64,000 nucleotides of DNA from Saccostrea cucullata (lineage: Eukaryota): contig NW_026931262.1 of the NCBI RefSeq assembly GCF_032062105.1, positions 124,001 through 188,000 on the forward strand, given 5' to 3'. Shown here one piece after another: positions 6,401 through 40,277 of this stretch (positions are counted from its first letter, which is position 1; each line of letters opens with the position of its first letter). A program made the translations under genes and the position numbers. The notes beneath the pieces are model-generated. The model ran no database searches. It was not told where the DNA came from and saw only the letters and a program-made list of their open reading frames with translations.

Positions 6401-9400
6401 CAGAAAAAATGTCAGCTATAATGTGACATAAAAACAATAACATTTTAAACAAAAAAAATCTTCAATTGTAAAACATAGGTAATCAGAGATTACAGAGCTC
6501 ACCTCAACGAATGTTGTCTTTAAGTAAGGCAAAGTCACACAATTAACCAACAAAAAGTATACATTCCAAAAATGAAAATATTTTTATAAGCAATTTTGAT
6601 CCGATACTTTGAAATAGACCTACATAAAAAATTTAAACTACTTCTTCTTCATGAAAATGTAATGAAAATCCAGCATCTGAAGCAAATTTGAGAGTTTTCA
6701 TCTCTTGATGCAGCATTTGTGCAAGTTTGGTTTATACAATGTTATATAAGCCTTATATTTTTTGGTAATAGACCTGCAACCATAACTTTTACCTTGTCTA
6801 TTATCTTAAAAATGTATGTCCAATTCAGCATCCGAAGCAAGTCCATTAGTGTGCATCCTTAGATGTATCATCCGTGCAAGTTTGCTCATTATAGAGCTCA
6901 TAGTTTATTAGAAATGAAACATGCATCAAAACTAACATTTTCACTCATCCACAAAAAGTAGGTCAGATTCAGCATCCGAAGCAAGCCTGGAAGTATGCAT
7001 CCTTAGATGTATCATCTATGCAAGACTGGTCATTAAAGAACTCATAGTTCCTTGGAAATGAAACCTGCACCAAAAACTTTTAACTATTCACTCAACCGGA
7101 AAATGTAGGTCAGATTCAGCATCCGAAGCAAGCCTGGTAGTGTGCATCCTAAGATGTATCATCCATGCAAGTTTGGTCAACATAGGGCTTAAAGTTACTT
7201 GCAAATGAAACCTGCACCAAAAACATTAACCTGTTCGCTCAACTGGAAAATGTAGGTCAGATTCAGCATCCGAAGCAAGACCGGTAGTATGCATCCTTAG
7301 ATGTATCATCCATGCAAGTTTGGTCAACATATGGCTTATAGTTACTTGGAAATGAAACCTGCACCAAAAACTTTAACCTGTTCACTCAACCGGAAAATGT
7401 AGGTCAGATTCAGCATCCGAAGCAAGCCCGGTAGTATGCATCCTTAGATGTATCATCCATGCAAGTTTGGTCAACATAGGGCTTATAGTTACTTGGAAAT
7501 GAAACCTACACCAAAAACTTTAACCTGTTCACTCAACCGGAAAATGTAGGTCAGATTCAGCATCCGAAGCAAGCCCGGTAGTATGCATCCTTAGATGTAT
7601 CATCCATGCAAGTTTGGTCAACATAGGGCTTATAGTTACTTGGAAATGAAACCTGCACCAACAACTTTAACCTGTTCACTCAACCGGAAAATGTAGGTCA
7701 GATTCAGCATCCGAAGCAAGCCCGGTAGTATGCATCCTTAGATGTATCATCCATGCAAGTTTGGTCAACATAGGGCTTATAGTTACTTGGAAATGAAACC
7801 TACACCGAAAACTTTAACCTGTTCACTCAACCGGAAAATGTAGGTCAGATTCAGCATCCGAAGCAAGCCCGGTAGTATGCATCCTTAGATGTATCATCCA
7901 TGCAAGTTTGGTCAACATAGGGCTTATAGTTACTTGGAAATGAAACCTACACCGAAAACTTTAACCTGTTCACTCAACGGGACGCCGACGCCGACGCCGA
8001 CACCGACACCGACGCCGAGGGTATTACATAAGCTCCCCCAACTTCGTTGAGGTGAGCTAAAAATAACTTACCCAAAATAAAAACTGTACTAATCTACCCC
8101 TTTTTCGCAAAATTTCCAACACGCGAAAAAAAACGGATATACGGTATATAGGAGTACCTCTTTCTAACTTCAAAATGTACCGGTGAGTGGATTTATTAGC
8201 TGTGTTAACTACGGAATGAGTTTTTCATGTTTTTGGCAATGCCGAACTTGCATACGTAACGTTAACTGTAATTCGTTGTTTGGCATCGCGACTCTGTGAA
8301 GCGGCCAATCAAATGACCCATACATACTTAATTACATACGACGATTTTTCGGTGAGTTTGCCCACGGGTGATAAGTAAAGACGAGATCACCCGTGGGTTT
8401 CCAACCATGATTTAAGATATAACCATCAAAATTTCCTCTCCTTGATTCCTTTCTTTGGAGAACTATAAATTTATTTCTCTCTAAACCTATCGGTGAGTGA
8501 GAGTGTAAGTATTTGGTCACCTCTTAGATAAGCTTAGTCTGTGAGATGAAGTAACATGACTTACTACATCATGTATTCAGCAACCTTTAAGATGGCTCAG
8601 TCCCCCTCTTTTTTATAAAGATAGGCATACTGTATATTTAGCTTTAGATTTAGCCCTCGACCCCCTTTTATTAGGCATGTTAGAGTTCAGGTAGATGCAC
8701 AGCAGTAGCTCTCTGCTTGAGAAAATTCAGACAGATAAAGCAGAGATCTATGGATCCAAGCGTTGTAAAAACCTTCAATTTACGCCGACGATTTTTTGTC
8801 ACTCACTATGGGTATTTTTTCGTGTATTTTATACTTTCCCAAGCTTTAAAAATAATTCAAATGGTATCTAATAATTAATCATACAGTAAACTTCAGTTCC
8901 TGATCATTTACTTACCTCTCAACACTAACAAATGGCTGTTTGTGGTTACGGACGTCGAAATGGAACTCTTTTAAACCGACATTACAAAACTATATACAGG
9001 ACTGTTTCGGACCGTTAAAAGGTAAACAAAGTATCAAATATAAGAGTTAAATATATGAATTATTATAGGATACCATTCTAAAAGCCAGAGAAAGCTTAAA
9101 CTACACGAAATAAGTCCCTGAAGTAGCGACAAAAAATCATCCGTGTAAATCGAAGGTTTTTACAATGCATGGATCTGTAGCTCTCTGCTTTATCTATCCA
9201 AATTTTCTCAAGCAGAGAGCTACAGTTCTGCAGCTAGAGTTCAGGTAAACCAGAAGTCTCTGTCCAGACTGTAGCTCTACTGGTTTGTACTTATAACAAA
9301 GGAAGAGAAAAGAAGCCATTGCCATCAGACCAAATATGTAGGAGGTGTAGTGTTTTAAAGGAATATCACAGAAATTTCAATTTTTAATAAGTAGTTTACT

Positions 9401-15400: not shown

Positions 15401-18400
15401 AAGTTTCAACAAAATCTGTAGTTCCGTTATTTCTATAGCATGGTATGGATCTTTACCTTAAAGGAATTTCACCAAAATTTCTATTTTTAGTAATCATGGC
15501 AAAACCGTTCATGGAAATCAAAAACTGATGCACTACATTACGTATCATAGTGTATTCTACTTGTGTGCCAAGTTATATTGAAATCAGACCAAATTTGTAG
15601 GAGGAGTAGCGTTTTAGAGGAATTTCACCAAATTTTTTTTTTACTAACCATGGCAACACCGCTCATCGAAATCAAAAACAAATGCACTAAATTATGTATC
15701 TTAGTGTAGTCTACTTGTGTGACAAATTTTATTGAAATCAGACCAAAACTGTAGGAGAAGTAGCATTTTAAAATAATTTCACCAAAATTTCTCTTTCTAG
15801 TAATCAACGCAACACCATTTAATGAAATCAAAAACCTATGCACTAAATGATGTATCTTAATGTAGTCTACGTGTGTGTCAAGTTATATTGAAATCACACC
15901 AAAATTGTAGGAGGAGAAGCGTTTAAAAGGAATTTCACCAAAATTTTTTTTACTAACCATGGCAACACCGCTCATCGAAATCAAAAACCGATGCACTAAA
16001 TTATGTATCTTAGTGTAGTCTACTTGTGTGCCAAGTTATATTGAAATCAGACCATTACTGTTGCAGTAGCGTTTTGAAAAATTGTTTACAGACAGAGGGA
16101 CAGCTCGACAGATGGACGGAAGAAGGAACACCTTACTCTCGCCTAAATAGTAAGTGTTAGTATTTGGAAAAAAAAATTTGGTACTGAAAGAAGTTCTACC
16201 TTATAAACCCCCCCCCCCCTTTCACTGAAATAAGATTTTCATGTTAAGACAATTTTGTTTTTGTTTATTTTGGCTTGTGAACTTTTTTTTTTTTTGTAGG
16301 TTTGAATTTTTTTTTGCTCTTTCACTTACCCCCCCCCCCCACTTTCAATTTGCTTCCCAATGCTTGTTATGTGTGGGTATTTGGCCACTTTGGAGATGCG
16401 CTTTGTCCATAATATGACAAAACTATGTGTGGGAATTTCCCCATGAGATGACTTACTATGTGTGGGTATTAGACCCTTTTGGAGATGAGCTTTGCCCCAT
16501 GAGATGACTTACTAAGTGTGGGTATTAGGCTACTTTGGAGATGAGCTTTGCCCGTGACATGTCTTACTATGTGTGGGTATTTGGCCACTTTAGAGATGAG
16601 TTTTCCCTGTGAGATGTCTTACTATGTGTGGGTATTTCCCCGTGAGATGTCTTACTATGTATGGGTATTAGGCCCCTTTGGAGATGAGCTTTGCCCATGA
16701 GATGACTATCTATGTGTGGGTATTAGGCCCGTTTGGAGATGAGCTTTGCCCGTGAGATGACTTACTATGTGTGGGTATTTCCCTGTGAGATGACTTCAGA
16801 GATGAGCTTTGCCCGTGAGATGACTTACTATGTAGGGGTATTTCCCTGTGAGATGACTTCCTATGTGTGGGTATTTGGCCACTTTGGAGATGAGTTTTGC
16901 CCATGAGATGACTATCTATGTGTGGGTATTAGGCCCCTTTGGAGATGAGTTTTTCCTGTGAGATGACTTACTATGTGTGGATATTTGGCCACTTACTATG
17001 TGTGGGTATTAGGCCCCTTTGGAGATGAGTTTTTCCTGTGAGATGACTTACTATGTGTGGATATTTGGCCACTTACTATGTGTGGGTATTAGGCCCCTTT
17101 GGAGATGAGTTTTGCCCGTAAGATGACTTACTATGTGTGGGTATTTGGCCGCTTACTATGTGTGGGTATTAGGCCCCTTTGGAGATGAGCTTTGCTCATG
17201 AGATGTCTTACTACTTATGTGTATTAGGACCCTTTGGAGATGAGCTTTGCCCCTGAGATGACTTACTATGTGTGGGTATTTCCCTGTGAGATGACTTCCT
17301 ATGTGTGGGTATTAGGCCACTTTGGAGATGAGTTTTGCCCATGAGATGACTATCTATGTGTGGGTATTAGGCCCCTTTAGAGATGAGTTTTTCTTGCGAG
17401 ATGACTTACTATGTGTGGATATTTGGCCACTTATTTTGTGTGGGTATTAGGCCCCTTTGGAGATGAGCTTTGTCCATAATATGACAAAACTATGTGTGGG
17501 TATTTCCCCATGAGATGACTTACTATGTATGGGTATTACGCCCCTTTGGAGATGAGCTCTGCCCCTGAGATGACTTACTATGTGTGGGTATTTCCCTGTG
17601 AGATGACTTCCTATGTGTGGGTATTTCCCTGTGAGATGACTTCCTATGTGTGGGCATTTGGCCACTTTGGAGATGAGTTTTTCCTGTGAGATGACTTACT
17701 ATGTGTGGATATTTGGCCACTTACTATGTGTGGGTATTACGCCCCTTTGGAGATGAGTTTTGCCCGTGAGATGACTTATTATGTGTGGGTATTTGGCCAC
17801 TTACTATGTGTGGGTATTAGGCCCCTTTGGAGATGAGCTTTGCTCATGAGATGTCTTACTACGTATGGGTATTAGGACCCTTTGGAGATGAGCTTTGCCC
17901 CTGAGATGACTTACTATGTTTGGGTATTTCCCTGTGAGATGACTTCCTATGTGTGGGTATTGATATTTGGCCACTTATTTTGTGTGGGTATTAGGCCCCT
18001 TTGGAGATGAGCTTTGTCCATAATATGACAAAACTATGTGTGGGTATTTCCCCATGAGATGACTTACTATGTATGGGTATTAGGCCCCTTTGGAGATGAG
18101 CTTTGCCCCTGAGATGACTTACTATGTGTGGGTATTTCCCTGTGAGATGACTTCCTATGTGTGGGTATTTCCCTGTGAGATGACTTCCTATGTGTGGGTA
18201 TTTCCCTGTGAGAAGAACTTACTATGTGTGGGTATTTTCCTGTGAGATGACTTACTATGTGTGGGTATTTGGCAACTTTAGATATGAGTTTTGCCCTTAA
18301 GACGACTTACTATGTGTGGGTATTTGGCCACTTTAGATATGAGTTTTGCTCGTGAGATGACTTACTATGTGTGGGTATTTGGCCACTTTGGAGATTAGTT

Positions 18401-21400
18401 TTGCTCGTGAGATAACTTACTATGTATGGGTATTTGGCCACTTACTATGTATGGGTATTAGGCCCCTTTGGAGATGAGCTTTGCCCATGAGATGACTTAC
18501 TATGTGTGGGTATTTGGCCACTTTGGAGATGAGTTTTGCCCGTGAGATGAAGTATCTAGACACCTGGTCCAGGTAAGAGGCAGCCTCAGTTTCTACCTGT
18601 CTGGCCTCTCCCATTGTTTCCTCCTGAAATCAAAAATATAAAAACTAGGTCAAAGTTAAGTAGGTCAAAGGTTGTAATTTCACACATTCTAATTCATCAG
18701 TTTTCCTTTTCTTTGAAATTAAATAATAAATTGCTTCATGCACTAACATGCAGTGACTCATTCTAATTTTCACACTGACTATTCTTTCCACCAATTCCAT
18801 TAACTGATGACAATCAGAATACATATTAAATGTATTGTCTATTTTCAATAACTGATTAAAGAGTATCTCTGCATTTTTTACCTGAACTGATACACCAAAG
18901 TTATTTCCATCTTCAATTTTTGGAATCAGGAATGCAATCCACATTTTCAGCTGGAGGGAATGTAATTAAAATATAATTTATAATGATGTCAGAAATTTGT
19001 AAATATATTCAATTCTAAACATACAGTCCATAAAATGTTGAGCAAGCTATAAGTGAATGGTGAGTGAATGCTGAATGAATGCAGAATTGGGTCTGTATAT
19101 TTGTGAGTCAATCTTCCATTATATCTCTGGAAATATAACAGGGGAAGTTGTCCCACTGAGTTTTCTTGATAAAATCCCATACTTATATTACATGTTCTTT
19201 TAATTTCACTCAATATCAAAATGATGCCATATAAATTTTAAACTAATTTTACCAGCAACGCTTGAGCTTGCATTTTCTGACCTAGAATTTCTACATGTAT
19301 ATGCAGGAATCTTGTTATAGCTAAATCCCATTCTCAAGGAGGAAAAATGAGAGTGATTACTAACATTAGGGCTAGAGGTGTGAATATGGGAGTATAGGGT
19401 TTGCATTCTCCCCCTGGAAATTTTCAGATAATGTTGCATTAATTTGTCTGCAGTTTGATAGCTAATCTGGGGGACATTTATGGAACTATCATATATATTT
19501 GTATTTGTAAATAATATATCTTAAAAATTACATGTATGTTAAAGTAGAATTTTCTTTAATAAAGAGAGGAATTTTGACATTTTTTTCAAAGGGGAAAGGT
19601 ACCGTTTACTGGTAGTTAAAACAGAATTAATAAATCCCTGAAACTGGTGGTGACTTCTATACTGTATTGTGTAGATTTATACTAATAATGATCAGCTTTT
19701 GGTTTCAAATTGCTTTTTGTAAAAAATAAATAAGAATTGTGAATAAACATTTATTTCAATATTTATTGAATTTTTTAAAAAAGTTTTCATACGCATTAAA
19801 GATTCCTGCAAGTGCATTTTTAAATACAACATGTATAAATCTTGCCAATTCTTTCAGAACTCATTTGTTTGCTCATTTGCAGATAAATTGCTGACCAGTG
19901 TCACAACTTATACATATCTTACCATATTTGTGTGATCCATCAGGTCTCTTATTAATGGTTTTAACTTCTCTGCTATCACCACTAACTTCTTATTACAAGG
20001 AGCTGGACCATTGGGTAACACCATGACCCTTGTACCTGGCATCAAAACAAAGTAATGCCTAGTGTTCTCTTGATTAACAGATAAGTCAATTATGAAATTA
20101 ATTTTCTGGGGAATGTGATTTTGTGGATCGAAGTCATTTGCACAAAGACTTTGAAATATTTATACAAGAAATATTAAACTATATAGCTATGTGTTAAAGG
20201 TACAAGTATTTTACATTTGACATTTTACCTGAGACATCATTATGGTTGTCATTTTCAATTTTCCTCTTTTTGCCTGCAGGCTGTAATAAAAAGAAATTCA
20301 GGAATGGTAAATATTGTTGCATCAAGATCACTTTATACATGACTTAAACTTAAAGTCTGAAACAACTTGATCAGAACTAAATCATGTCTAATAATTCAGA
20401 ATCAAAAGATAGTCAACTTTAAACCTTCAACATGCAGTCTTACTCAAATACTGAATTCATCTCACTTGTTACACCAAGAAAATAATTTCAATGGTTTGAA
20501 ACAGTGTTTAAAACTCCTGTAATATTGCCTAAACATGTAAAGCAGACTATTAGTTAAAGTTGTCAGCCCTTTCAAAAAGTAAGTTGCCCAAGAAAATAGC
20601 TATCTTAAATAAATTTGTTTTAGCAATAATATGAAAGGGGAAGGAGGAACACCCTGGACTTTGCAGAGTTATTAAATGTATATATTCTAATACACTAAAC
20701 CATGTAAAAGTGAGGTTTGCTCCTCCCCTCCCCCAAAAGGACCCCTTTTCGAAAACATAAATCAATGTTAAGTATAGGAATGTCACCGGGTACTCGATCG
20801 AATGTCCGAGTTTCGAATACTAAAACTGGTACTCGGTTTCTCAGATGTATATTTTTTCTTTATTCCAAAGTACATATATTTATCAAAAACTTATCAAAAT
20901 TAACTTAAATGTGCATTAGATAATTAGAGTGCCGTCGCCTACACCTGTAAAACACCTGTTATCGCCTGTGGCTATGTTACTTCTGCTTCACTAGTGGGGA
21001 CTTTACAAAGGTGGGTGGCAGATTGATTAAAGCATCTACCCAAAAAAAAAATTGTAAATTATGTCTTTTGTGTGTGTGTGTGTGTCTTTTTTAATAAATA
21101 TAATTAGGTAAAATAAATCATTTTCATTGGACTCGGTTGTTTTTAAACATGCACTCAAAATGCAATAAAAAAACATTGATGTTTAACAGAGTTTAACTGG
21201 ATTAAAATAAATTAATGAACATGTATTTACAATTTTACCGAGTACCCAGGTACTCAATTGGAAAATCGTCCAAGTAACCGATTATCAAATATTTACCAAT
21301 TTGACATCCCTAGTTTAGTAGGTTTGAAAAGTCCTTGGTAGGAACAATATTTTATGTATCTTCCATGTAGATCTGCTGTATGTACCATATCTATAAATTG

Positions 21401-29161: not shown

Positions 29162-31601
29162 CGTCTGTTGTCAAGATCAACCAATATTCTTCGCGACCAA
29201 GAAGTTAATGTTGGCGCTATTCTTCAAACTGTGTGGATAAAGAATATTTTAGAAGCGGATACAAACAAAAATTGTAAGTAACATAAAGCATATCATCTTA
29301 TGCGAGCAGTAATTTTAACAATAAGGGTGTCTGATATGATATCAAAGTGGAAATGTGAGGGGATGGAGGTCATTGCAGATGAAGCCTCCTTATTACTTTT
29401 TTTGGAGGGTGGAAGGTGGGGTGGGGGGTCCAACACATTTCGTTAATGACTTATTTCTATCTGGATTTGTTTTGGTAAAAAATATTTCCTATCTTGTGTA
29501 GATCTTTAAAGCTGGAATTGGTTTTTTAATAGTGTTATACCCTAAAGTTAAGTTATACCCTTCCCTTGATTCCTTTGTTAGAAAGGTCACTGACATTGCA
29601 ACGCAAGACAAACGACTTGTATTTATGTACAAAGGAGTTCTAGCATAATTTATTTGTTTATCGACAAAACAGTTTATCCGTTGACGTTTAATCACTGATC
29701 ACCCCCCCACCCCCGTCTTTTCTCCCTTACCCAATAACATGCAACATCACAAATCAAAACCACAAATTCCATAATTTAATGTAAGTTAATGTCCAGTTTG
29801 TTGACACGTAAACGTATAGACGTGAACTTAAAGTTGCAAAGTTTAAACCATTTTAGAATCGGTTCCTACCTGGAAAAAGGGGAGGTAATATTACTACTTC
29901 CGCCCAAACTTATCGCCGTTAGGTGGCCAAATTCTCGTCTGTTGTCAAGAACAACAGTGTTGTTCGTAACGGCAAAGTTAATGTTGGCGCCATCCTTCAA
30001 TTTTCTTGTATGTAAGTAGACACTTTTATACAATACATAGGACTATGATATTTGACTAGATTTTGATTAGGAGTCGATGTTAAAATGTTTTACAGTTAGG
30101 TACCTAGGGCATCATTGAAAATATCTTTGTTTCCCCTAACCCGACCCTAAATTCTCAAGTTGGGTAGGTAGGTAGGTAAATATTTTTTTTTTCTGATAAC
30201 AACTTTGAAAATACATTCTGAAATTTATAGAATAATACCTTTATCAGAAATGTACCAAAATAAATTATAAACATCATATCATACAGTGTACCAATGCCAA
30301 TAAAGGCAATATTTAAGATAAATAGATTTATAAATAATTATTACTTATTTCAGCTTGTTAGATAGCTCACACCACTGACCAGTGTAAAATCATTGAAATC
30401 AAATAGAGTAAATGTTTCTATTATCAGACACGCGGGGATCTTCGGACAATAAAGTAAATAGCTATGACCGTACATGTAAAAACTTAGCTCCAGTGTCGCA
30501 ATAAATGCTGGCACAAAAGAGATACATGTAATGCTGAGTACTTGTTAGTCAAAGTTTGGAGCCTTTCACCTGGCAGATGATTAAATGTCATTCCAAAATT
30601 CTCAAAAAATTAAAGCAATTTAAAGAAGCAACAAATCTTCAAGAGCCAAATTTTAGAAAAATACAGCATGGCGCAAAGGTTAGAGCGTCTGCTCTAGAGT
30701 CGAGAAGTAAGGAGCTGATCCTTAGGTCTCGGGTTCGAATCCACTGCAGGACATGGAGTCTGGTCCTTCGGATTAAACCGAGGCACCATATTCGAATCCA
30801 TTGCCGGACATGGAGACTGGTAAACTGAGGTTCCATGTCGCAGAAGGTGTTGGCACGAAAAAGATCCCTCACTGCTCAATGGCCCTAAGTGCTAAGTATA
30901 GATGTAAAGGATAGTAGTAAGGGCGGACGTATACCCCCCTTAACAATGGGAGTCTATTGTGTTGGAGAACAATAGAAGAACAATGGGGGAGAACAATGGG
31001 GTGACCCTGACCGAGATCTAGTTAACGATATGACCCTGACCGTATCGGTTACTGAGAATGAGCACGGGTATTTAAATGATGGTGAAATGGGATACAGGAG
31101 CACTTACACGAATGGATGGACACGGGTATTTAATTGTCAAAGTTGGGAGGGAGAGCAAGAGAAGGGCAACAAGTACTCTAAGACTTTGTCATAAAAAAGA
31201 AATGTTGAGATTGCTCGCGCGCACCGCCGCCGCCGCCGGCCGGAACACGTGGACTCCGGGGACCGAAGCTACCGGAAACCGTGGACTCCGGAGACCGTGG
31301 ACTCCGGAACTATTTTAGATGATTATAACATTCCGGGAGAATAAAATATTAAATAACAAAAGCATTTCTGAGGGGAAAAATTATGTGTGCATTTTACAAA
31401 TGCATGCTGTTCTTATAAAGAACGCAGATAGATCTTATATATATTTTTACTAACGCCACCATATTGTGGTGGTGGTGGTGGTGGAGAATATAATGACAAA
31501 AACAAAACACTATGATTTTTTGTAATTTTATTCGGACTTGATTTCCATTTTCAACAATATAAAATAATGCACAAATATCATTACAAAATAAATGTGTTAG
31601 T

Positions 31602-32888
31602 TTATTCATTTTCTTGAAAGAGGTGATTAAACTTGACATGGTGTTTGTCGAGAATACATGATATTGCATCTTCAAGAGGCACGTCATTTTCATTGATAAG
31701 AGAGAGAATTTCCTGACGAATACTCCTGTGCGACGCACTTTTCATGAGGCAGGCAGACGGTTTTAATTGTTCTTTATAATTTTTCAAAAGTAAATCTCTG
31801 TCTTTTCCCAGCATCCGTTTCATGGTCGTTTCCCTGGCTTCTTCCGTTGGAACTCCTTTTTGAACTAATTTGGTAACTTGGTCCTGGAATAAAGGGTCAT
31901 GTTGTTTCCAGACGGTGTTGATCATCATATCAAAGCCGACTGTATCGTCCTCATCATCTGTTTGATCGCTACTGTCCGTGTCTTCCTCTGAGTCTTCCTC
32001 ACAGTTGCAGCCAAGTGCGGTGTGACGACCCAAGTCGTAAGATGTAGCAAACACGAGACCACAATCAAGGCAAAATGGTTGCAAAATGTTGTTCTCACTT
32101 CGTTTGAGTGTAACCTCGCTGAAATCGACAGGAGGCATTTTTTTCAAGAAGATATTGGTTTGTAATCGCTTGGATTCTGGTGTGGTTTGCTTTAAATCTA
32201 CGACAAGGGATCCGTGAGGCGTTTCATCAACGGCTTTGTGATAGGCATCTAGCAATATGTTGGTATGTCCAGGATACATTTGACGAGCGAGGTTAGAGAT
32301 CTGCAGTTTGTCTCGCGGATTCTTAAAGAGAACCAAATATTGGCTGTTCAGGTTCATTGTCCTATTTTCTTTTCCACTGTTGAATAGGTTCTGCAAAATG
32401 CAAACTATGCTCATGTTTCTGTGGTGGGCACCCTCCACGAATATTTCACATACATCTTTATTTGTAGTAGAATCTTTCATGAGATCGTCGATGATTAAAA
32501 GTGTGTTTTCGTCGGGGTTCTGAAAGTCGTCGCTGTCAAGGTCAGCCGGTAGTCCTTGGATGAACTCAAGGATAGGTATTTGTCTTTTGAGGTCCTCATA
32601 CAAGGGCTGCCATCTTTTATACAGCCAAATGATTCGGTCAGGAGACGGTGAGATGAAATTTGGTCTTTGAAGTAAAAGTTCTTTCATCCATGTTGATTTT
32701 CCCGACATAGTAGGACCCGCAATGACCATGGTAAACGGATGCTGAAATTTAAATTGGTTGTGACCGCCATCGAAATGAATGCCTCGACGATATGGATGTT
32801 GCCCTGCATGAGCGGTTCTCTCGTGTCTTCTTAAGGCATCTGTGCGTGAAAAAATTTTATGACATATGTTGCAAGGTGTGGACGACAT
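31602..32888 (-). CDS. Polinton-type DNA-packaging ATPase (A32/FtsK-HerA superfamily) with N-terminal C2H2 finger and C-terminal finger/acidic/helical extension
   Basis: Walker A GPTMSGKS, Walker B LLIIDD, motifs HHRN, LQNLF, RTMNLNSQYLVLFKNPRD. Fingers CNICHKIFSRTDALRRHERTAH and CLDCGLVFATSYDLGRHTALGC. The stop codon overlaps AATAAA. Confidence 0.92.
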   Translation of the reverse strand: MSSTPCNICHKIFSRTDALRRHERTAHAGQHPYRRGIHFDGGHNQFKFQHPFTMVIAGPTMSGKSTWMKELLLQRPNFISPSPDRIIWLYKRWQPLYEDLKRQIPILEFIQGLPADLDSDDFQNPDENTLLIIDDLMKDSTTNKDVCEIFVEGAHHRNMSIVCILQNLFNSGKENRTMNLNSQYLVLFKNPRDKLQISNLARQMYPGHTNILLDAYHKAVDETPHGSLVVDLKQTTPESKRLQTNIFLKKMPPVDFSEVTLKRSENNILQPFCLDCGLVFATSYDLGRHTALGCNCEEDSEEDTDSSDQTDDEDDTVGFDMMINTVWKQHDPLFQDQVTKLVQKGVPTEEARETTMKRMLGKDRDLLLKNYKEQLKPSACLMKSASHRSIRQEILSLINENDVPLEDAISCILDKHHVKFNHLFQENE

Positions 32889-32939
32889 GGTGTTCTTCGT
32901 GCAAATGACGGCTTGTCCGATTTACGTCTTACTTAATTA

Positions 32940-33237
32940 TTACATTCGAACCCTCTTTCCAGGTGGCCCGTTACCGTTGTCCTTGATCGTTCTCTTCAGC
33001 GGCATATGTGGTCTTCCTTCTTTGATGGGCTCTTTTAGCACAGAATTTGCTCTCTCTACTGCTGCTTTTGCTGGGGAAAATCGCTGGTACAGCTGTTTAA
33101 AAGTCTTGTCTATTTTGACAGTTTTAACCATTTTGCGACCATGTCTTGGCTTCCTTTGAATGATGTGTACGTCTTTCGTCGCCCAGACTCTAGGGTCTGA
33201 GATATAAGTATTCTTATAGTACTTTTTTTTTATCCAT
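32940..33237 (-). CDS. Small basic Polinton protein (~98 aa once a +1 frameshift in an A9 run is corrected)
   Basis: ATG at 33237. Removing one A gives MDKKKYYKNTYISDPRVW..., in frame with ORF 32940-33131 (SPAKAAVERA, K/R-rich tail). Confidence 0.55.
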
Positions 33238-33296
33238 GATGCGAACTGGTAAACGTCGAAAACACGAATGAAGGACGCGTCTTAACGAATATCCTT

Positions 33297-33736
33297 TTAA
33301 GTTGATGAATACGATTGATTACCTATGGCTGACAATCGAAAAGTCAGAGTAGTATGACCTCCCCGTTCAAAAATGTAGCTGGTTCATTGTCTTTATCTCT
33401 GATTTCTATGTGAATTTTTTCAAACTCTTGAATTCGCAGTGGCACTTGGAATGGTCTCGTGAAGATTTGATTCCTGTTAGGCTCCAAAACAATATGCCTC
33501 AGTAACGGTCTGTACTGTTGGCTCACCACGGACACTGTGTCACAGACGTCGCAGTAGATAAAGAGCTCTTTCTTTGTGGTTTTGGCAATGCCTTTGACAT
33601 AGAATTCGCTTAGTTCTACAGTCCATTGGTCCGTAAACACCAACCATTTTGGTAATATGACCGTAAAATCGTATCGTTGATTGCCTGGGAACATATCTTT
33701 GCTTTCAGAAGATCTGAGAATGTGTGATGTTGCCAT
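33297..33736 (-). CDS. Minimal minor capsid (penton/PX-like, single jelly-roll) protein
   Basis: Motifs SSESKDMFPGN-DFTVILP-WTVELSEF, LFIYCD, PLLRHI, FEKIHIEIRD match the Polinton penton pattern as I recall it. The ORF stops at 33344, but a 1-nt shift restores a TLTFR final strand ending at 33297. Confidence 0.75.
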
Positions 33737-35224
33737 CCTCTGCAGTAATGAAAGGGTTTGCGAGTACAGGGGTATTATATGCTATGTCCCAAGAAAACCC
33801 ACAAATTAAAGCAAGTCTGCGCAATTCGATCCAAAAATTTACGATTTATCATCTAAAATAGTTCCGGAGTCCACGGTCTCCGGTAACTTCGGTCTCCGGA
33901 GTCCACGGTTTCCGGTAGCTTCGGTCTCCGGAGTCCACGTGTTCCGGCCGGCGGCGGTGCGCGCGAGCAATCTCAACATTTCTTTTTTATGACAAAGTCT
34001 TAAAGTACTTGTTGCCCTTCTCTTGCTCTCCCTCCCAACTTTGACAATTAAATACCCGTGTTCATCCATTCGTGCAAGTGCTCCTGTATCCCATTTCACC
34101 ATCATTTAAATACCCGTGCTCATTCTCAGTAACCGATACGGTCAGGGTCATATCGTTAACTAGATCTCGGTCAGGGTCACCCCATTGTTCTCCCCCATTG
34201 TTCTTCTATTGTTCTCCAACACAAAGACTCCCATTGTTAAGGGGGGTATACGTCCGCCCTTACTACTAAGGATGTATTCGCTTTAACAAAAGAATTGACC
34301 TATAGGAGAGAACAATTTCCCGGAAAAAGTGACATTTAAAAATCAATCTTTATTTGTTGTTTTCTACCGTATATATGTCTAAATTTTTTAAATTTGTATT
34401 TTATACCTAAAATTTATTATTTACGACTTTACAATAAACCTCCAAAGTTGATCGAAACACCATTTTGTCCTTTAAAGCGTTGATTTTTGCATGAATTTTG
34501 GCCTTGAAGTCCATCAGGGCAGGCCTGCCCCTAAATAAAATTGTGATATTTTGATAGGTTAGGATGTAAGGAATAATTTAAGATAAGATTTTTTTAGGGG
34601 CACCCCTGCCCTGGGGTCGAGATTCACAAAAAACCTACAAAAAATAAGGAAACCAGATTTTCATCACCTGCTATGAATTTATGCCATTTATTCTAATAGT
34701 CAGACTAGCTCAATTGATATATGCGCTGACTTTTATACCTTGTATACTCTCTTTTTAAAGTCGGGGGTTCGAATCCACCTGGTACAACACTTATAAAGTT
34801 TTAAATTTCGTCTTTCCAAAGACTATTTTTTTATATAGACGTGTATTTTTCCGTCCATTTTCTATCCCTTATGCATGCCCATTCTTGATATAAGAAACAC
34901 TGAAGAGATATCAAATCGTAACAATCCAATGTACAGTGTGTGTTACTCAATACGGATATTCGTGGCAGCATTGAGCTGCAATGAATTTAAATTGTATATA
35001 TTCCTTAGAATTTAATCACATTGATTTTGGCTACATATTTCAGTAAATGCACTCCCTTGGATTTCATTTAGGCCTTGCACACATTAATGACAAGTTTTTA
35101 TTATATCCACGGATAAATAGCCTAGACATAAAGAATAAACTTTCAGAGACAGTAGACATTACCTTTATGCACAAAGAGAAGTAAAGACAAATATCAATTA
35201 TTACATTTGGAGATAACAAACTCA

Positions 35225-35368: not shown

Positions 35369-36355
35369 AGGGGAGATAATTATGAATTAGAGAAAAATTA
35401 ATGGCATTTTAAAAAAATCTTCTTCTCAAGAACCACTGGGCCAGGAAAGATGAAACTCATATGAAATCATCCTCAGGTTGTGTAGATTCAAGTTTGTTCA
35501 AATCATGACCCCCGGGGCTAGGGTGGGGCCAAAATGGCCGACCAAAGTTTAACATAGGAATATTAGGAAAAAATCTTTAAAAATCTTCTTCTCAAGAACC
35601 ACTGGGCAGGAAAGATGAAACTCATGTGGAATCATTCTCAGATAGTGTAGATTCAAGTTTGTTCTAATCATGACCCCTGGGGCTAGGGTGGGGCCAAATT
35701 GACCGACCAAAGTTTTACATAGGAATATATAGAAAAAAATCTTTAAAAATCTTCTTCTCAAGAACCACTGGGCCAGGAAAGATGAAACCCATGTGGAATC
35801 ATCCTCAGGTAGTGTAGATTCAAGTTTGCTCAAATCATGACCCCTGGGGCTAGGGTGGGGCCAAATTGGCCGACCAAAGTTTTACATAGGAATATATAGA
35901 AAAAAATCTTTAAAAATCTTCTTCTCAAGAACCACTGGGCCAGGAAAGATGAAACCCATGTGGAATCATCCTCAGGTAGTGTAGATTCAAGTTTGCTCAA
36001 ATCATGACCCCTGGGGCTAGGGTGGGGCCAAATTGGCCGACCAAAGTTTTACATAGGAATATATAGAAAAAATCTTTAAAAATCTTCTTCTCAAGAACCA
36101 CTGGGCCAGGAAAGATGAAACCCATGTGGAATCATCCTCAGGTAGTGTAGATTCAAGTTTGTTCAAATCATGACCCCTGGGGCTAGCGTGGGGCCAAAAT
36201 GGCCGACCAAAATTTTACATAGGGATATATTGGGAAACCTTTTAAAATCTTCTTTTCAAGTACTTCAAAGCCATGATTAGTGATATATTTCTATTTAAAT
36301 GGAATCATCCTCAGGTAGTGTAGATTCTAATTTTTTTCAAATCATGACCCCTTGG
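35225..36355 (+). repeat. ~166-167-bp satellite array in a truncated Helitron-type element
   Basis: aaaatcttcttctcaagaaccactggg recurs at ~35413, 35580, 35746, 35913, 36079. (GTC)n at the head. Confidence 0.85.
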
Positions 36356-37227: not shown

Positions 37228-37473
37228 TATGGGTGAAGGGGAACAAAAATTGTGAATTTCATGATCCCTGCCCCCCAGGGCCCTGAGGGGTGGGGCCAAA
37301 ACCACTAAAATTAATGCAATCTTTAAAAATCTTCTTCTTTACTCCTGGGCATCAAGCAGTCCAACTGTTTGCATGATTGTAATCAGCAATGAGTCCTCTA
37401 CCAAAATTGTGAAATTCATGGCCCTGGGGTCAGGGGTTCTAGTGCTAGGGCAGGGCTAAATAAGTAGGTAGTG

Positions 37474-37507
<34 letters not shown>

Positions 37508-37809
37508 GCTCCTGGGTATTAAATAAACTAACTAAGTACATAGTTATGATGAGCAAGAGTGCCTCTACCAAAATTGTGAATTTTATGGCCCCAGGGTCAG
37601 GGGTTCTGGTGTTAGGGTGGGGCTCTATTGATTATATAGTGAAAATACAGGAATTCTTTGAAAATCTTCTTCTCTGCTCCTGGGTATTAAATAAACTAAC
37701 TAAGTGCCTAGTTATGGTGAGCAAGAGTGCCTCTACCAAAATTGTGAATTTTATGGCCCCAGGATTAGGGGTTCTGGTATTAGGGGGGGGCTCTATAGAT
37801 TATATAGTG

Positions 37810-37843
<34 letters not shown>

Positions 37844-38750
37844 GCTCCTGGGTATTAAATACACTAACTAAGTGCATAGTTATGATGAGCAAGAGTGCCT
37901 CTACCAAAATTGTGAATTTTATGGCCCCAGGGTCAGGGGTTCTAGTGCTATGGGGGGGGGGGCTCTATAGATTATGTAGTTAAAATACATGAATTCTTTG
38001 AAAATCTTCTTCTCTGCTCCTGGGTATTAAATAAACTAACTAAGTGCATAGTTATGATGAAGAAGAGTGCCTCAACCAAAATTGTGAATTTTATGGCCCC
38101 AGAGTCAGGGGTTCTGGTGTTAGGGTGGGGCTCTATTGATTATATAGTGAAAATACAGGAATTCTTTGAAAATCTTCTTCTCTGCTCCTGGGTATTAAAT
38201 AAACTAACTAAGTGCATAGTTATGATGAGCAAGAGTGCCTCTAGCAAAATTATGAATTTTATGGCCCCAGGGTCAGGGGTTTTGGTGTTAGGGCGGGGCT
38301 CTATAGATTATATAGTGAAAATTCATTTAATCTTTAAAAATTTTCTTCTCTGCTCTAGGGTATTAAGCAGATGAACTACCTATATAGTTATGATCTACAA
38401 GGGCCCTAATCTTCCAGAATTGTGAATTTCAAGGCCCCAGGGTCAGGGGTACCATGGGGGGGGGTGTACTTATATACTGAAAATGAATGAATGGTTTGAA
38501 ATCTGCTCCTTGGTATTAATCAAATATCAAGGCCTAAGGGTCAGGGGTTCATGTGTGGTAGGGGCACTACTGATTATTGCTGAATATAACTGATTAGTTG
38601 AAATGCATTTTTGTTCCCCTACCTTGTGTATGGGTATTAAGTAAACAAACTAAGCAACTGCTAAGTGTATTGTTATGATGAATTAAATTTAATCACTGGA
38701 AAGTTGTTGCATAATGCTCAGGTGACCTATAAGGCCCATGGGCCTCTTGT
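37076..38750 (+). mobile_element. Helitron/Helentron-type element with 168-bp satellite
   Basis: TTTTTAGGTCACCTGAG...CTCAGGTGACCT 5' IR, microsatellite, 168-bp units, 3' ctcaggtgacc plus hairpin aggcccatgggcct. Confidence 0.9.
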
Positions 38751-39436: not shown

Positions 39437-40277
39437 TTTTTAGCTTTACTGGTCAGAGACCAGAAGAGCTTATGCGATAGTAAGTTGTCCGTCGTCCGTC
39501 CGTCTGTCTGTCTGTCTGTCCGTCTGTCTGTAAACAATTTTTCAAAATGCTACTCCTCCTACAGTTTTGGTCTGATTTTAATATAACTTGGCACACAAGT
39601 ATACTACACTAAGATACATAAAATAGTGCATCGGATTTTGATTTCGATGAACGGTGTTGCCATCGTTACTAAAAATAGAATTTTCTGTGAAATTCCTTTA
39701 AAACGCTACTCCTTCTACAGTTTCGGTCTGATTTCAATATAACTTGTCGCACAAGTAGACTACACTAAGATACATAGAATAGTGCATCGGTTTTTGATTT
39801 CGATGAATAGTGTTGCCATGGTTACTAAAGATAGAATTTTCTCTGAAATTCCTTTAAAACGCTACTCCTTCTACAGTTTTGGTCTGATTTCAATATAACT
39901 TGTCGCACAAGTAGACTACACTAAGATACATAGAATAGTGCATCGGTTTTTGATTTTGATGAATAGTGTTGCCATGGTTACTAAAGATTGAATTTTCTCT
40001 GAAATTCCTTTAAAACGCTACTCCTTCTACAGTTTTGGTCTGATTTCAATATAACTTGTCGCACAAGTAGACTATACTAAGATACATAGAATAGTGCATC
40101 GGTTTTTGATTTCGATGAATAGTGTTGCCATGGTTACTAAAGATTGAATTTTCTCTGAAATTCCTTTAAAAAGCTACTCCTTCTACAGTTTTGGTCTGAT
40201 GGCAATGGCTTCTTTTCTCATCCTTTGTTATAAGTACAAACCAGTAGAGCTACAGTCTCGACAGAGACTTCTGGTTT
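39437..40277 (+). mobile_element. Complete Helitron/Helentron-type element with 156-bp repeats
   Basis: TTTTTAGCTTTACTGGTCAGAGACCAGAAGAGCT head, (GTCT/GTCC)n, about four 156-bp units, ccagtagagct IR and terminal hairpin. Confidence 0.9.

What the first reader, a model, noticed from the sequence alone, without database searches (positions are those of the whole stretch)
30913..34267. 3.4-kb 'virion-module-only' mini-Polinton: satellite element or segment of a multipartite Polinton-like virus
Seen: AGTAGT termini, ~410-bp highly similar TIRs, an exact 6-bp TSD, and three tightly packed co-oriented genes (penton-like, small basic protein, packaging ATPase). Known: Polintons/Mavericks are normally ~15-25 kb, make 6-bp TSDs and encode pPolB, RVE integrase, protease and major capsid. 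All four are absent here. Ordinary non-autonomous derivatives need only the TIRs, yet this one keeps an uninterrupted 428-codon ATPase. Inference: it is either a helper-dependent satellite that supplies its own packaging motor and penton to redirect capsids, or one segment of a split genome whose segments share TIRs.
Basis: partly seen in the sequence, partly recalled or inferred. Interest (0 to 1): 0.9.

Follow-up and report, generated by a model that had tools for sequence, protein, structure and literature searches.

The report
Three-gene mini-Polinton with intact ends
A 3.4-kb mobile element bounded by long inverted repeats carries only three virus-particle genes (vertex protein, small basic protein, DNA-packaging ATPase) and belongs to an old, selection-maintained lineage of stripped-down relatives of Polinton virus-like transposons, so it probably needs a fuller relative in order to move.

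Summary
The element spans 30913-34267 (3355 bp), with AGTAGT...ACTACT ends, 411/420-bp inverted repeats, an exact 6-bp duplication (AAGGAT) and three co-oriented minus-strand genes. Folds confirm a single-jelly-roll penton-like protein and an A32/B204-type packaging ATPase that carries two zinc fingers. The middle gene encodes a basic protein (pI 10.8). No integrase, polymerase, protease or candidate major capsid gene lies in the element or the 64-kb window.

New here: the same triad, in the same order, occurs on two other contigs (L004, L090). Two further loci look alike by gene size. The triad ATPases form their own clade (178/200 bootstraps), beside ATPases of integrase-ATPase-polymerase elements. 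All three genes show dN/dS of 0.09-0.20 against L004.

So this is more likely a long-lived lineage than a one-off deletion product. It is best read as a helper-dependent, gene-carrying non-autonomous Polinton derivative. Satellite versus genome segment cannot be decided, and neither partner type seen carries a major capsid gene.

This copy is slightly decayed: one break each in the penton and middle genes, none in the ATPase. The host genome could not be searched, so copy number and a partner with the same ends are untested. I rate it a new variant of a known kind, of moderate-to-high interest.

The parts
30907..30912 (.). Left copy of the 6-bp target-site duplication (AAGGAT)
   Evidence: Read directly; identical to 34268-34273.
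30913..31323 (+). Left terminal inverted repeat (411 bp), starting AGTAGT
   Evidence: Self-BLAST (93.7% over 427 columns); alignment; repeat pairs I1, I2 and I5.
30942..30989 (+). Cluster of three AACAATRGRRG motifs near the left end, mirrored at 34192-34238
   Evidence: 7 matches in the window against 0.42 expected; 6 of the 7 lie in the two inverted repeats. A role as a protein-binding site is inference only.
31240..31308 (+). Inner part of the left repeat made of about 16-bp tandem units; the mirror array is at 33863-33947 with one more unit
   Evidence: (families D3, D5, D7).
31324..31601 (-). Non-coding spacer after the ATPase gene. It has two AATAAA hexamers on the coding strand, one overlapping the stop codon and one about 80 nt further on
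   Evidence: Read. Use as poly(A) signals is inference.
31602..32888 (-). Packaging-type ATPase gene, 428 codons, no break. Layout: N-terminal C2H2 zinc finger (aa 4-27), P-loop core (about aa 47-245), second CCHC-type finger (about aa 273-294), acidic stretch, helical C-terminal domain (aa 317-423)
   Evidence: All 18 invariant columns of a 55-sequence family alignment are kept. 223 homologues, mostly from bivalves.
32940..33242 (-). Middle gene for a small basic protein with a conserved C-terminal basic, nuclear-localisation-like tail. The frame is open for 100 codons, but there is one break: no in-frame start where relatives start, which leaves a 63-codon ORF from an internal ATG
   Evidence: 62% aa identity to the 101-aa ORF of L004. 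Homologues follow the penton gene in L090, L088 and L089.
33344..33736 (-). Penton-like single-jelly-roll gene, 130 codons, with one break: a premature stop that removes roughly the last 8-11 codons present in relatives
33737..33847 (-). Unique spacer upstream of the penton gene, with a TATA-like box about 40 nt before the ATG
   Evidence: Read. Promoter function is inference.
33848..34267 (-). Right terminal inverted repeat (420 bp), ending ACTACT
34268..34273 (.). Right copy of the 6-bp target-site duplication (AAGGAT)

Best explanation
This is a non-autonomous member of the Polinton/Maverick (adintovirus-like) world. It belongs to an old lineage of small, inverted-repeat-bounded elements that keep just three genes: a vertex (penton) protein, a small basic core-like protein, and a packaging ATPase with two zinc fingers.

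Shown:
- The ends, the 6-bp duplication, the folds and the gene order.
- The recurrence of that order in distant relatives.
- A separate ATPase clade for triad elements.
- Strong purifying selection on all three genes.

Inferred:
- It was inserted by an rve-type integrase supplied in trans. Relatives with that integrase also make 6-bp duplications.
- It is copied from its ends by a protein-primed polymerase, also supplied in trans.
- Its own three proteins serve its own spread. The zinc-finger ATPase may recognise repeated motifs in its inverted repeats and load its DNA into particles whose shell protein comes from a fuller Polinton. Its own penton and core protein would be built in.

In that sense it works like a satellite, comparable to phage satellites that bring their own packaging specificity. 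The copy in this window is a fairly recent insertion that has begun to decay: one break in the penton gene, one in the middle gene, none in the ATPase.
For: - Ends, duplication and inverted repeats.
- ATPase identity.
- Penton fold.
- Basic protein.
- No integrase, polymerase or candidate capsid homologue anywhere in the window.
- Same triad in L004, collinear over window 31726-33739 at 71% nt identity.
- Same triad in L090 (132, 156 and 415 aa, all open).
- Loci of P0004 (232, 105 and 347 aa) and P0007 have no rve or polymerase Pfam hit within 8-10 kb.
- dN/dS window against L004: penton 0.095, middle 0.20, ATPase 0.093, with dS 1.3-1.9. The upstream non-coding DNA is unalignable.
- Penton dN/dS L090 against L089: 0.045.
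- NJ tree: window, L004, P0008, P0004 and P0007 form a clade in 178 of 200 bootstraps. Integrase-linked ATPases fall outside it.
- Multicopy relatives: the P0004 cluster has 12 members on 12 contigs, and the P0008 cluster includes two Pinctada imbricata proteins.
- The integrase-bearing relative L002 makes a 6-bp duplication.
- In fuller relatives the order is integrase, penton, basic protein, 441-aa candidate capsid protein, 180-aa ORF, ATPase. The triad is therefore that block without the two middle genes.
Against: - Only this one copy is seen whole, with both ends.
- L004 stops inside the ATPase gene and L090 ends 83 bp before and 385 bp after the triad, so neither is proven to be a small element.
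- The two ERZ26168041 loci gave gene tables but no DNA.
- dS is near saturation, so the ratios are rough.
- Selection could have acted while the genes sat in full-length elements.
- Two of the three genes in this copy are broken.
- No helper with the same ends, no expression data and no particle data are available.
- No major capsid gene was found in either kind of short relative, so the source of a shell is conjecture.
- The ATPase is also kept by capsid-less integrase-ATPase-polymerase elements (L002). This hints that it may do something other than packaging.
Confidence: 0.55

Rival explanations
1. It is an ordinary, recent deletion derivative of a full-length Polinton. The three ORFs survive only because the copy is young. 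The conservation seen against L004 and L090 was earned inside full-length elements that natively have penton, basic protein and ATPase next to each other near one end.
For: - No second copy in the window.
- The inverted repeats are about 99% alike over the outer 320 bp, which points to a young insertion.
- Two of the three genes already carry one break each.
- L004 and L090 are incomplete contigs.
- L005 shows that deletion derivatives do arise in this group: a penton gene followed only by the C-terminal third of an integrase.
Against: - In the fuller relatives I could read (L058, L088), the penton follows the integrase directly, and a 441-aa gene and a 180-aa ORF lie between the basic protein and the ATPase. 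The triad therefore needs at least two or three separate losses.
- The same junctions are shared by the window, L004 and L090.
- Triad ATPases are monophyletic (178/200) rather than scattered among integrase-linked ones.
- No large ORFs or Pfam hits flank the triad on the 30-40-kb contigs.
Confidence: 0.25
2. It is one segment of a split (multipartite) Polinton-like genome. Replication and integration genes sit on one inverted-repeat-bounded segment, like the 7.9-kb integrase-ATPase-polymerase element of Pinctada. Particle genes sit on others, and all segments share termini.
For: - L002 is a complete 7940-bp element with a 6-bp duplication that carries only integrase, zinc-finger ATPase and polymerase and no particle genes.
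- Its ATPase clade sits beside the triad clade.
- Both kinds occur in Pinctada imbricata and in JGI sample 3300045951 (L003 and L004).
Against: - Both kinds carry their own ATPase, which is redundancy rather than division of labour.
- Neither carries the candidate major capsid gene or a protease, so a third segment would be needed.
- No shared termini were seen. The ends of L090 do not match the L002 repeats, and the window's repeats resemble neither.
- No multipartite Polinton turned up in the literature search.
Confidence: 0.12
3. The ends belong to some other cut-and-paste transposon that captured Polinton genes, or the genes have been taken over by the host.
For: Some other DNA transposon superfamilies also make 6-bp duplications (own knowledge). 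The ATPase family is annotated as host 'C2H2-type domain-containing protein' in bivalve genomes.
Against: - Inverted repeats hundreds of bases long, AG...CT ends and a 6-bp duplication are the Polinton signature.
- The integrase-linked relative L002 gives the same duplication length.
- There is no transposase ORF of any kind in the element.
- Multicopy, variably truncated relatives look like a mobile family, not a host gene.
Confidence: 0.05

Closest known systems
Polintons / Mavericks (polintoviruses, adintovirus-like elements) of animals
   Same: 6-bp target duplication, inverted repeats hundreds of bases long, 5'-AG...CT-3' ends, single-jelly-roll penton, A32/FtsK-type packaging ATPase. The closest relatives sit in bivalve genomes, which are very rich in such elements.
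   Different: It is 3.4 kb instead of about 15-25 kb. It has no protein-primed polymerase, rve integrase, protease or major capsid gene. By the definition quoted in PMC5499653, all Polintons encode a polymerase and an integrase, so it is not a Polinton proper. The ATPase carries two zinc fingers and a helical tail.
Non-autonomous (internally deleted) DNA transposons, including non-autonomous Polinton entries in repeat libraries (own knowledge)
   Same: It keeps the ends and must rely on enzymes supplied in trans.
   Different: Typical derivatives need and keep no genes. Here a fixed three-gene set recurs across deep divergence, with dN/dS of 0.05-0.2 and its own ATPase clade.
Phage satellites (P4, SaPI/PICI-type; own knowledge)
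   Same: This is a working analogy only: a small element that lacks replication-independent spread and shell genes but brings its own packaging-specificity and particle-modifying proteins.
   Different: There is no homology, the host is eukaryotic, and helper dependence and packaging are not shown.
Capsid-less integrase-ATPase-polymerase element of Pinctada imbricata (L002:8537-16476)
   Same: Related zinc-finger ATPase (about 51% aa identity), 6-bp duplication, short length, bounded by inverted repeats.
   Different: Complementary gene set (integrase and polymerase, no penton or basic protein), TG...CA ends, unrelated repeat sequence.
Virophages, polinton-like viruses, transpovirons
   Same: Small linear dsDNA elements with inverted repeats. 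Virophages and polinton-like viruses share the penton and ATPase fold (mavirus penton and PLV hits).
   Different: Those are 7-40 kb and found in protists. Virophages and PLVs encode their own major capsid protein, and transpovirons have no particle genes.

Membership tests
Polinton/Maverick (autonomous) | 6-bp target-site duplication | tested here: met
   AAGGAT on both sides.
Polinton/Maverick (autonomous) | Long terminal inverted repeats with 5'-AG...CT-3' ends | tested here: met
   411/420-bp repeats with AGTAGT...ACTACT ends.
Polinton/Maverick (autonomous) | [quoted passage not shown] | tested here: not met
   No ORF in the element. The L002 polymerase query finds nothing in the window at E up to 10.
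Polinton/Maverick (autonomous) | Retrovirus-like (rve) integrase | tested here: not met
   No Pfam rve hit. Integrase queries from L001 and L002 find nothing in the window.
Polinton/Maverick (autonomous) | Double-jelly-roll major capsid protein | tested here: not met
   There is no room for it in the element. The 441-aa candidate capsid family of relatives has no homologue in the window. That this family is the capsid protein is itself an inference from position and size.
Polinton/Maverick (autonomous) | Adenovirus-like maturation protease | tested here: not met
   No ORF and no Pfam hit in the element.
Polinton/Maverick (autonomous) | Single-jelly-roll penton protein | tested here: met
   Model with pLDDT 92.5. 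Fold matches: an adintovirus protein (E 3e-6), the mavirus penton, and a chain of the PBCV-1 capsid structure whose identity I did not confirm.
Polinton/Maverick (autonomous) | FtsK/HerA-A32-type packaging ATPase | tested here: met
   Pox_A32 above its cut-off. The best fold match is the B204 packaging NTPase.
Non-autonomous derivative of a resident Polinton | Same termini as an integrase- and polymerase-bearing element in the same genome | not testable with these tools
   The host genome is in no searchable collection. A terminal 20-mer is absent from the prokaryote genome collection.
Non-autonomous derivative of a resident Polinton | Multiple copies with different target duplications | tested here: inconclusive
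   One copy in the window. Relatives are multicopy elsewhere: 12 members on 12 contigs, and 2 Pinctada genes.
Satellite of a helper virus-like element | Dependence on a helper for replication, integration and shell, with its own genes under selection | tested here: inconclusive
   The lack of these functions is shown, and selection on its own genes is shown. Helper dependence and packaging are not testable here.
Multipartite virus-like genome | Segments with shared termini and complementary gene sets in one genome | tested here: inconclusive
   A complementary element type exists (L002). No shared termini were found where they could be compared, and both types keep an ATPase.

The most novel reading that the evidence does not exclude
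Bivalve genomes harbour an ancient, selection-maintained lineage of about 3-kb satellite-like elements that parasitise Polintons. The elements carry only a penton, a core-like basic protein and a zinc-finger packaging ATPase. They borrow integrase, polymerase and the shell protein from other elements. This would be the first satellite of a Polinton/adintovirus-type element in animals, or one part of a modular, split Polinton system together with capsid-less integrase-ATPase-polymerase elements.
Probability: 0.3. Interest if true: 0.85.

Novelty: new variant of a known kind. Interest (0 to 1): 0.62.

Why it matters
Polintons are thought to switch between a transposon life and a virus life, but particles have never been seen. 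Almost nothing is known about parasites of Polintons themselves.

A small element that discards every enzyme needed to copy and insert itself, yet keeps a packaging motor, a vertex protein and a core protein under strong selection, argues two things. These particle genes are used in animals, and elements compete for or share particles.

It also gives a concrete, countable marker, the triad and its ATPase clade, for surveying such relationships across mollusc genomes. Finally, the family is currently annotated as host zinc-finger proteins or even bacterial proteins, which is an annotation problem worth knowing about.

Tried and rejected
- Middle ORF as an integrase or chromodomain remnant: no similarity to the integrases of L001, L002 or L003. 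It instead matches a gene that follows the penton in fuller relatives. Rejected.
- Short ATPase-only contigs (L006-L012) as complete mini-elements: no inverted repeats at their ends. They are fragments.
- Shared termini between L090 and the L002 element, both Pinctada-type: none.
- Upstream region of L004 against the window's repeat: unalignable.
- Sequence-level recognition of the penton, the basic protein and the 441-aa candidate capsid family in Pfam, PHROGs and PDB: no meaningful hits. Only fold comparison identified the penton.
- Terminal 20-mer in the prokaryote genome collection: no match. ATPase profile in the same collection: two short MAG contigs of no use.
- Locus searches with the penton alignments failed for lack of a conserved stretch.
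- The bacterial promoter/terminator scan is irrelevant to a eukaryotic element.
- Literature searches found no description of a gene-carrying mini-Polinton or a multipartite Polinton.

Left out on purpose:
- Any scan of the viral contig collection and any fetch of named animal viruses.
- Any read-through or joining of the two broken genes.

That place is in no note, script output or part of this report.

Full report
**1. What is there**

The element runs from 30913 to 34267 (3355 bp). It begins AGTAGT and ends ACTACT. The six bases outside each end are both AAGGAT. Shifting the ends by one base destroys the duplication, so the AG...CT reading with a 6-bp duplication is the consistent one.

The left inverted repeat is 30913-31323 (411 bp) and the right is 33848-34267 (420 bp).
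- Counting gaps, they are 93.7% identical over 427 columns.
- Base by base, they differ by about five substitutions, a 1-bp indel, a 6-bp indel and one extra 16-bp unit.
- The outer ~320 bp are about 99% alike.

Each repeat has three features:
- a perfectly matching terminal 44-mer;
- three AACAATRGRRG motifs (7 in the window against 0.42 expected; 6 of them lie in the two repeats);
- an inner block of roughly 16-bp tandem units.

Nothing else in the 64-kb window resembles the element.

**2. The genes**

All three genes are on the minus strand.

*ATPase (31602-32888).* The ORF has 428 codons and no break. Its layout is:
- an N-terminal C2H2 zinc finger;
- a P-loop core that passes the Pfam Pox_A32 cut-off, with a weak Adeno_IVa2 hit;
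- a second, CCHC-type finger;
- an acidic stretch;
- a helical C-terminal domain.

The AlphaFold model has pLDDT 87.7. Its best solved-structure neighbours are the B204 genome-packaging NTPases of the Sulfolobus turreted icosahedral viruses (E 6e-7). The copy keeps all 18 invariant columns of a 55-sequence family alignment.

*Penton-like gene (33344-33736).* This 130-codon ORF had no Pfam or PDB sequence match. It does belong to a large family: 380 representative clusters, typically 130-150 aa. Its model (pLDDT 92.5) is an eight-strand jelly roll. The nearest folds are:
- a 161-aa adintovirus protein (E 3e-6, TM 0.72);
- a 167-aa chain of the PBCV-1 capsid structure 6ncl (TM 0.66); I did not confirm which capsid protein this chain is;
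- the mavirus penton.

Longer family members (270-330 aa) carry an insertion at one fixed point of the jelly roll. Penton bases of larger viruses show the same arrangement (own knowledge).

*Middle gene (32940-33242).* The frame is open for 100 codons and encodes a very basic protein (pI 10.8). Its C-terminal basic tail is conserved and looks like a nuclear localisation signal.

**3. State of this copy**

- ATPase: no break.
- Penton gene: one break, a premature stop that removes roughly the last 8-11 codons that relatives have.
- Middle gene: one break. The conserved body has no in-frame start where relatives start, most simply because of a frameshift, so only a 63-codon ORF from an internal ATG remains.

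An assembly error cannot be excluded for either break. I give no places and joined nothing. I stopped there and recorded it nowhere.

**4. What is missing**

There is no polymerase, integrase, protease or major capsid gene in the element, and there is no room for one. Three queries taken from relatives found nothing among all ORFs of the 64-kb window:
- integrase;
- polymerase;
- a 441-aa family that I take to be the major capsid protein.

**5. Relatives**

The ATPase has 223 homologues. The named ones are almost all from bivalves: Pinctada, Mytilus, Mizuhopecten, Mya and Pecten. A few are labelled as bacterial bins and are most likely host DNA. None is closer than about 74% aa identity, so the host genome itself is not in the collections.

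The relatives occur in two contexts.

*(a) Next to an rve integrase with a chromodomain (L001, L002, L003).* L002, from Pinctada imbricata, is complete.
- It is 7940 bp, with inverted repeats of about 220-240 bp, TG...CA ends and a 6-bp duplication GGTATT.
- It carries only integrase, zinc-finger ATPase and a 1268-aa protein.
- That protein is homologous to a Pfam DNA_pol_B_2 polymerase with a nuclease-like insert. This fits the mollusc polymerases with nuclease inserts described in bioRxiv 10.1101/2023.08.22.554363.
- It has no particle genes.

*(b) The triad.*
- L004 (JGI sample 3300045951) is collinear with window 31726-33739 at 71% nt identity. It has penton (141 aa), basic protein (101 aa) and ATPase, which is cut by the contig end.
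- L090 (ENA ERZ17096855, 2753 bp) has penton (132 aa, 40% aa identity), basic protein (156 aa, 37%) and ATPase (415 aa, 46%). All three are open.
- L089 is 79% nt identical to L090 over the penton gene and the start of the middle gene.
- Two loci in ERZ26168041 show a matching pattern of gene sizes. Neither has an rve or polymerase Pfam hit within 8-10 kb, but no DNA was available for them.
- The L090 ATPase cluster (at least 90% identity) contains two Pinctada imbricata proteins. The P0004 cluster has 12 members of 134-377 aa on 12 contigs. Triad-type ATPases are therefore multicopy in at least one genome, and they co-occur with the L002 type in Pinctada.

**6. Where the triad comes from**

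In fuller relatives the penton follows the integrase directly.
- L088: integrase, penton, 149-aa homologue of the basic protein, then the start of a gene that matches the 441-aa family.
- L058 (12.6 kb): integrase, penton, 128-aa ORF, 441-aa ORF, 180-aa ORF, ATPase, two small ORFs, then polymerase on the other strand.

The order penton, basic protein, large conserved gene recalls the adenovirus order penton base, pVII..., hexon (own knowledge). That the 441-aa family is the capsid protein is inferred from position, size and conservation only. It gave no Pfam or PDB sequence hit, and I had no prediction jobs left.

On this layout the triad is the morphogenetic block minus the two genes between the basic protein and the ATPase. 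It also lacks the integrase on one side and the polymerase on the other. That is at least two or three losses, not one clean deletion.

L005 is a different derivative. There the penton is followed only by the C-terminal third of an integrase, read in two frames.

**7. Lineage and selection**

In a neighbour-joining tree (56 sequences, 391 columns), the window, L004, P0008 (= L090), P0004 and P0007 form a clade in 178 of 200 bootstraps. The integrase-linked ATPases lie outside it. The clade also shares a short linker and a short C-terminus.

| Comparison | Gene | dN/dS |
|---|---|---|
| Window vs L004 | penton | 0.095 |
| Window vs L004 | middle gene | 0.20 |
| Window vs L004 | ATPase | 0.093 |
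| L090 vs L089 | penton | 0.045 |

For the window-L004 pair, dS is 1.3-1.9 and the upstream non-coding DNA cannot be aligned. Synonymous sites are near saturation, so these ratios are rough. The direction is not in doubt.

The simplest reading is that the triad arrangement is old and that all three proteins have mattered to whatever carried them.

**8. How it most likely works**

Shown:
- The structure, the folds and the gene order.
- The recurrence of the triad, its separate ATPase clade and the selection on its genes.

Inferred:
- Insertion by an rve integrase supplied in trans.
- Copying from the ends by a protein-primed polymerase supplied in trans.
- Use of its own zinc-finger ATPase, penton and core protein to get its own DNA into particles whose shell comes from a fuller element.

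The repeated motifs in the inverted repeats are candidate recognition sites for the fingers. This is speculation.

I give the broader statement (a helper-dependent, gene-carrying lineage) a confidence of 0.55.

The segment idea gains something from the complementary L002-type element. It loses from three points: both types keep an ATPase, neither has the candidate capsid gene, and no shared termini were seen where a comparison was possible.

The plain young-deletion reading stays alive, because only this one copy is seen whole.

**9. Comparison and novelty**

The element meets the Polinton criteria for ends, duplication, penton and ATPase. It fails those for polymerase, integrase, capsid and protease. 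It is therefore a non-autonomous derivative and not a Polinton by the definition in PMC5499653.

Bivalve genomes are known to be the richest in Polinton-type viral regions (bioRxiv 10.1101/2025.04.19.649669). Five literature searches found no description of a conserved gene-carrying mini-element or of a split Polinton.

I rate it a new variant of a known kind, with interest 0.62.

**10. Limits and steps left out**

- I did not scan the viral contig collection or fetch named animal viruses, because of the bar on fetching viruses of animals.
- The related loci I read are integrated or metagenomic relatives that the tools returned for the finding's own proteins.

Noticed in passing
L002:8537-16476 (Pinctada imbricata VSWD01000003.1): A complete 7940-bp element with inverted repeats of about 220-240 bp, TG...CA ends and a 6-bp duplication GGTATT. 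It carries only an rve+chromodomain integrase, a zinc-finger ATPase and a 1268-aa protein-primed-type polymerase. It is a capsid-less short Polinton relative.
   Followed up: partly
L005:134-973: A penton gene (74% nt identity to the window's) is followed only by the C-terminal ~115 residues of an integrase, read in two frames, with no ATPase on the contig. This is another kind of deletion derivative in the same sample as L003 and L004.
   Followed up: partly
L040:585-4043, L002:12073-15879, L034:816-5420: The polymerases of these relatives carry a weak Endonuclease_7/HNH-like stretch inside the protein. This fits the nuclease-insert polymerases reported for mollusc Polintons.
   Followed up: partly
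Penton family (L035:3529-5279, L052:2658-4382): Some members are two or three jelly rolls in tandem (for example 389-396-aa proteins with three matched stretches) or occur as adjacent paralogues. Others have a 110-170-aa insertion at one fixed point.
   Followed up: no
One search hits P0054, P0069, P0089, P0032; L086: Members of the ATPase family are deposited as proteins of bacterial bins (Solemya velum gill symbiont, Candidatus Thiodiazotropha, Cytophagales) or named MotB or SAR1 GTPase. This most likely reflects host DNA in bins and misannotation.
   Followed up: no
window 3806-4312, 15458-16061, 39544-40200: Three arrays of the same 156-bp satellite unit. The third is in the opposite orientation.
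   Followed up: no
window 6809-7982; 35413-36260; 37320-38450; 51269-51979: Further tandem arrays: 147 bp x8, 167 bp x5, 168 bp x6.7 and 35 bp x20. The region just right of the element is dominated by the 167/168-bp arrays.
   Followed up: no
window 16436-18550: A 2-kb complex minisatellite of 25-, 33- and 55-bp units, with raised G+C (0.43) and strong AT skew (-0.28).
   Followed up: no
window 57725-58276: A 183-codon ORF with a reverse-transcriptase domain (RVT_1, E 4e-18). It is a retroelement fragment.
   Followed up: no
window 30734-30821: Directly left of the element there are two copies of a 31-mer containing a tRNA T-loop-like GGTTCGAATCC motif. ARAGORN finds no tRNA, so this may be a SINE-like repeat into or beside which the element inserted.
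   Followed up: no
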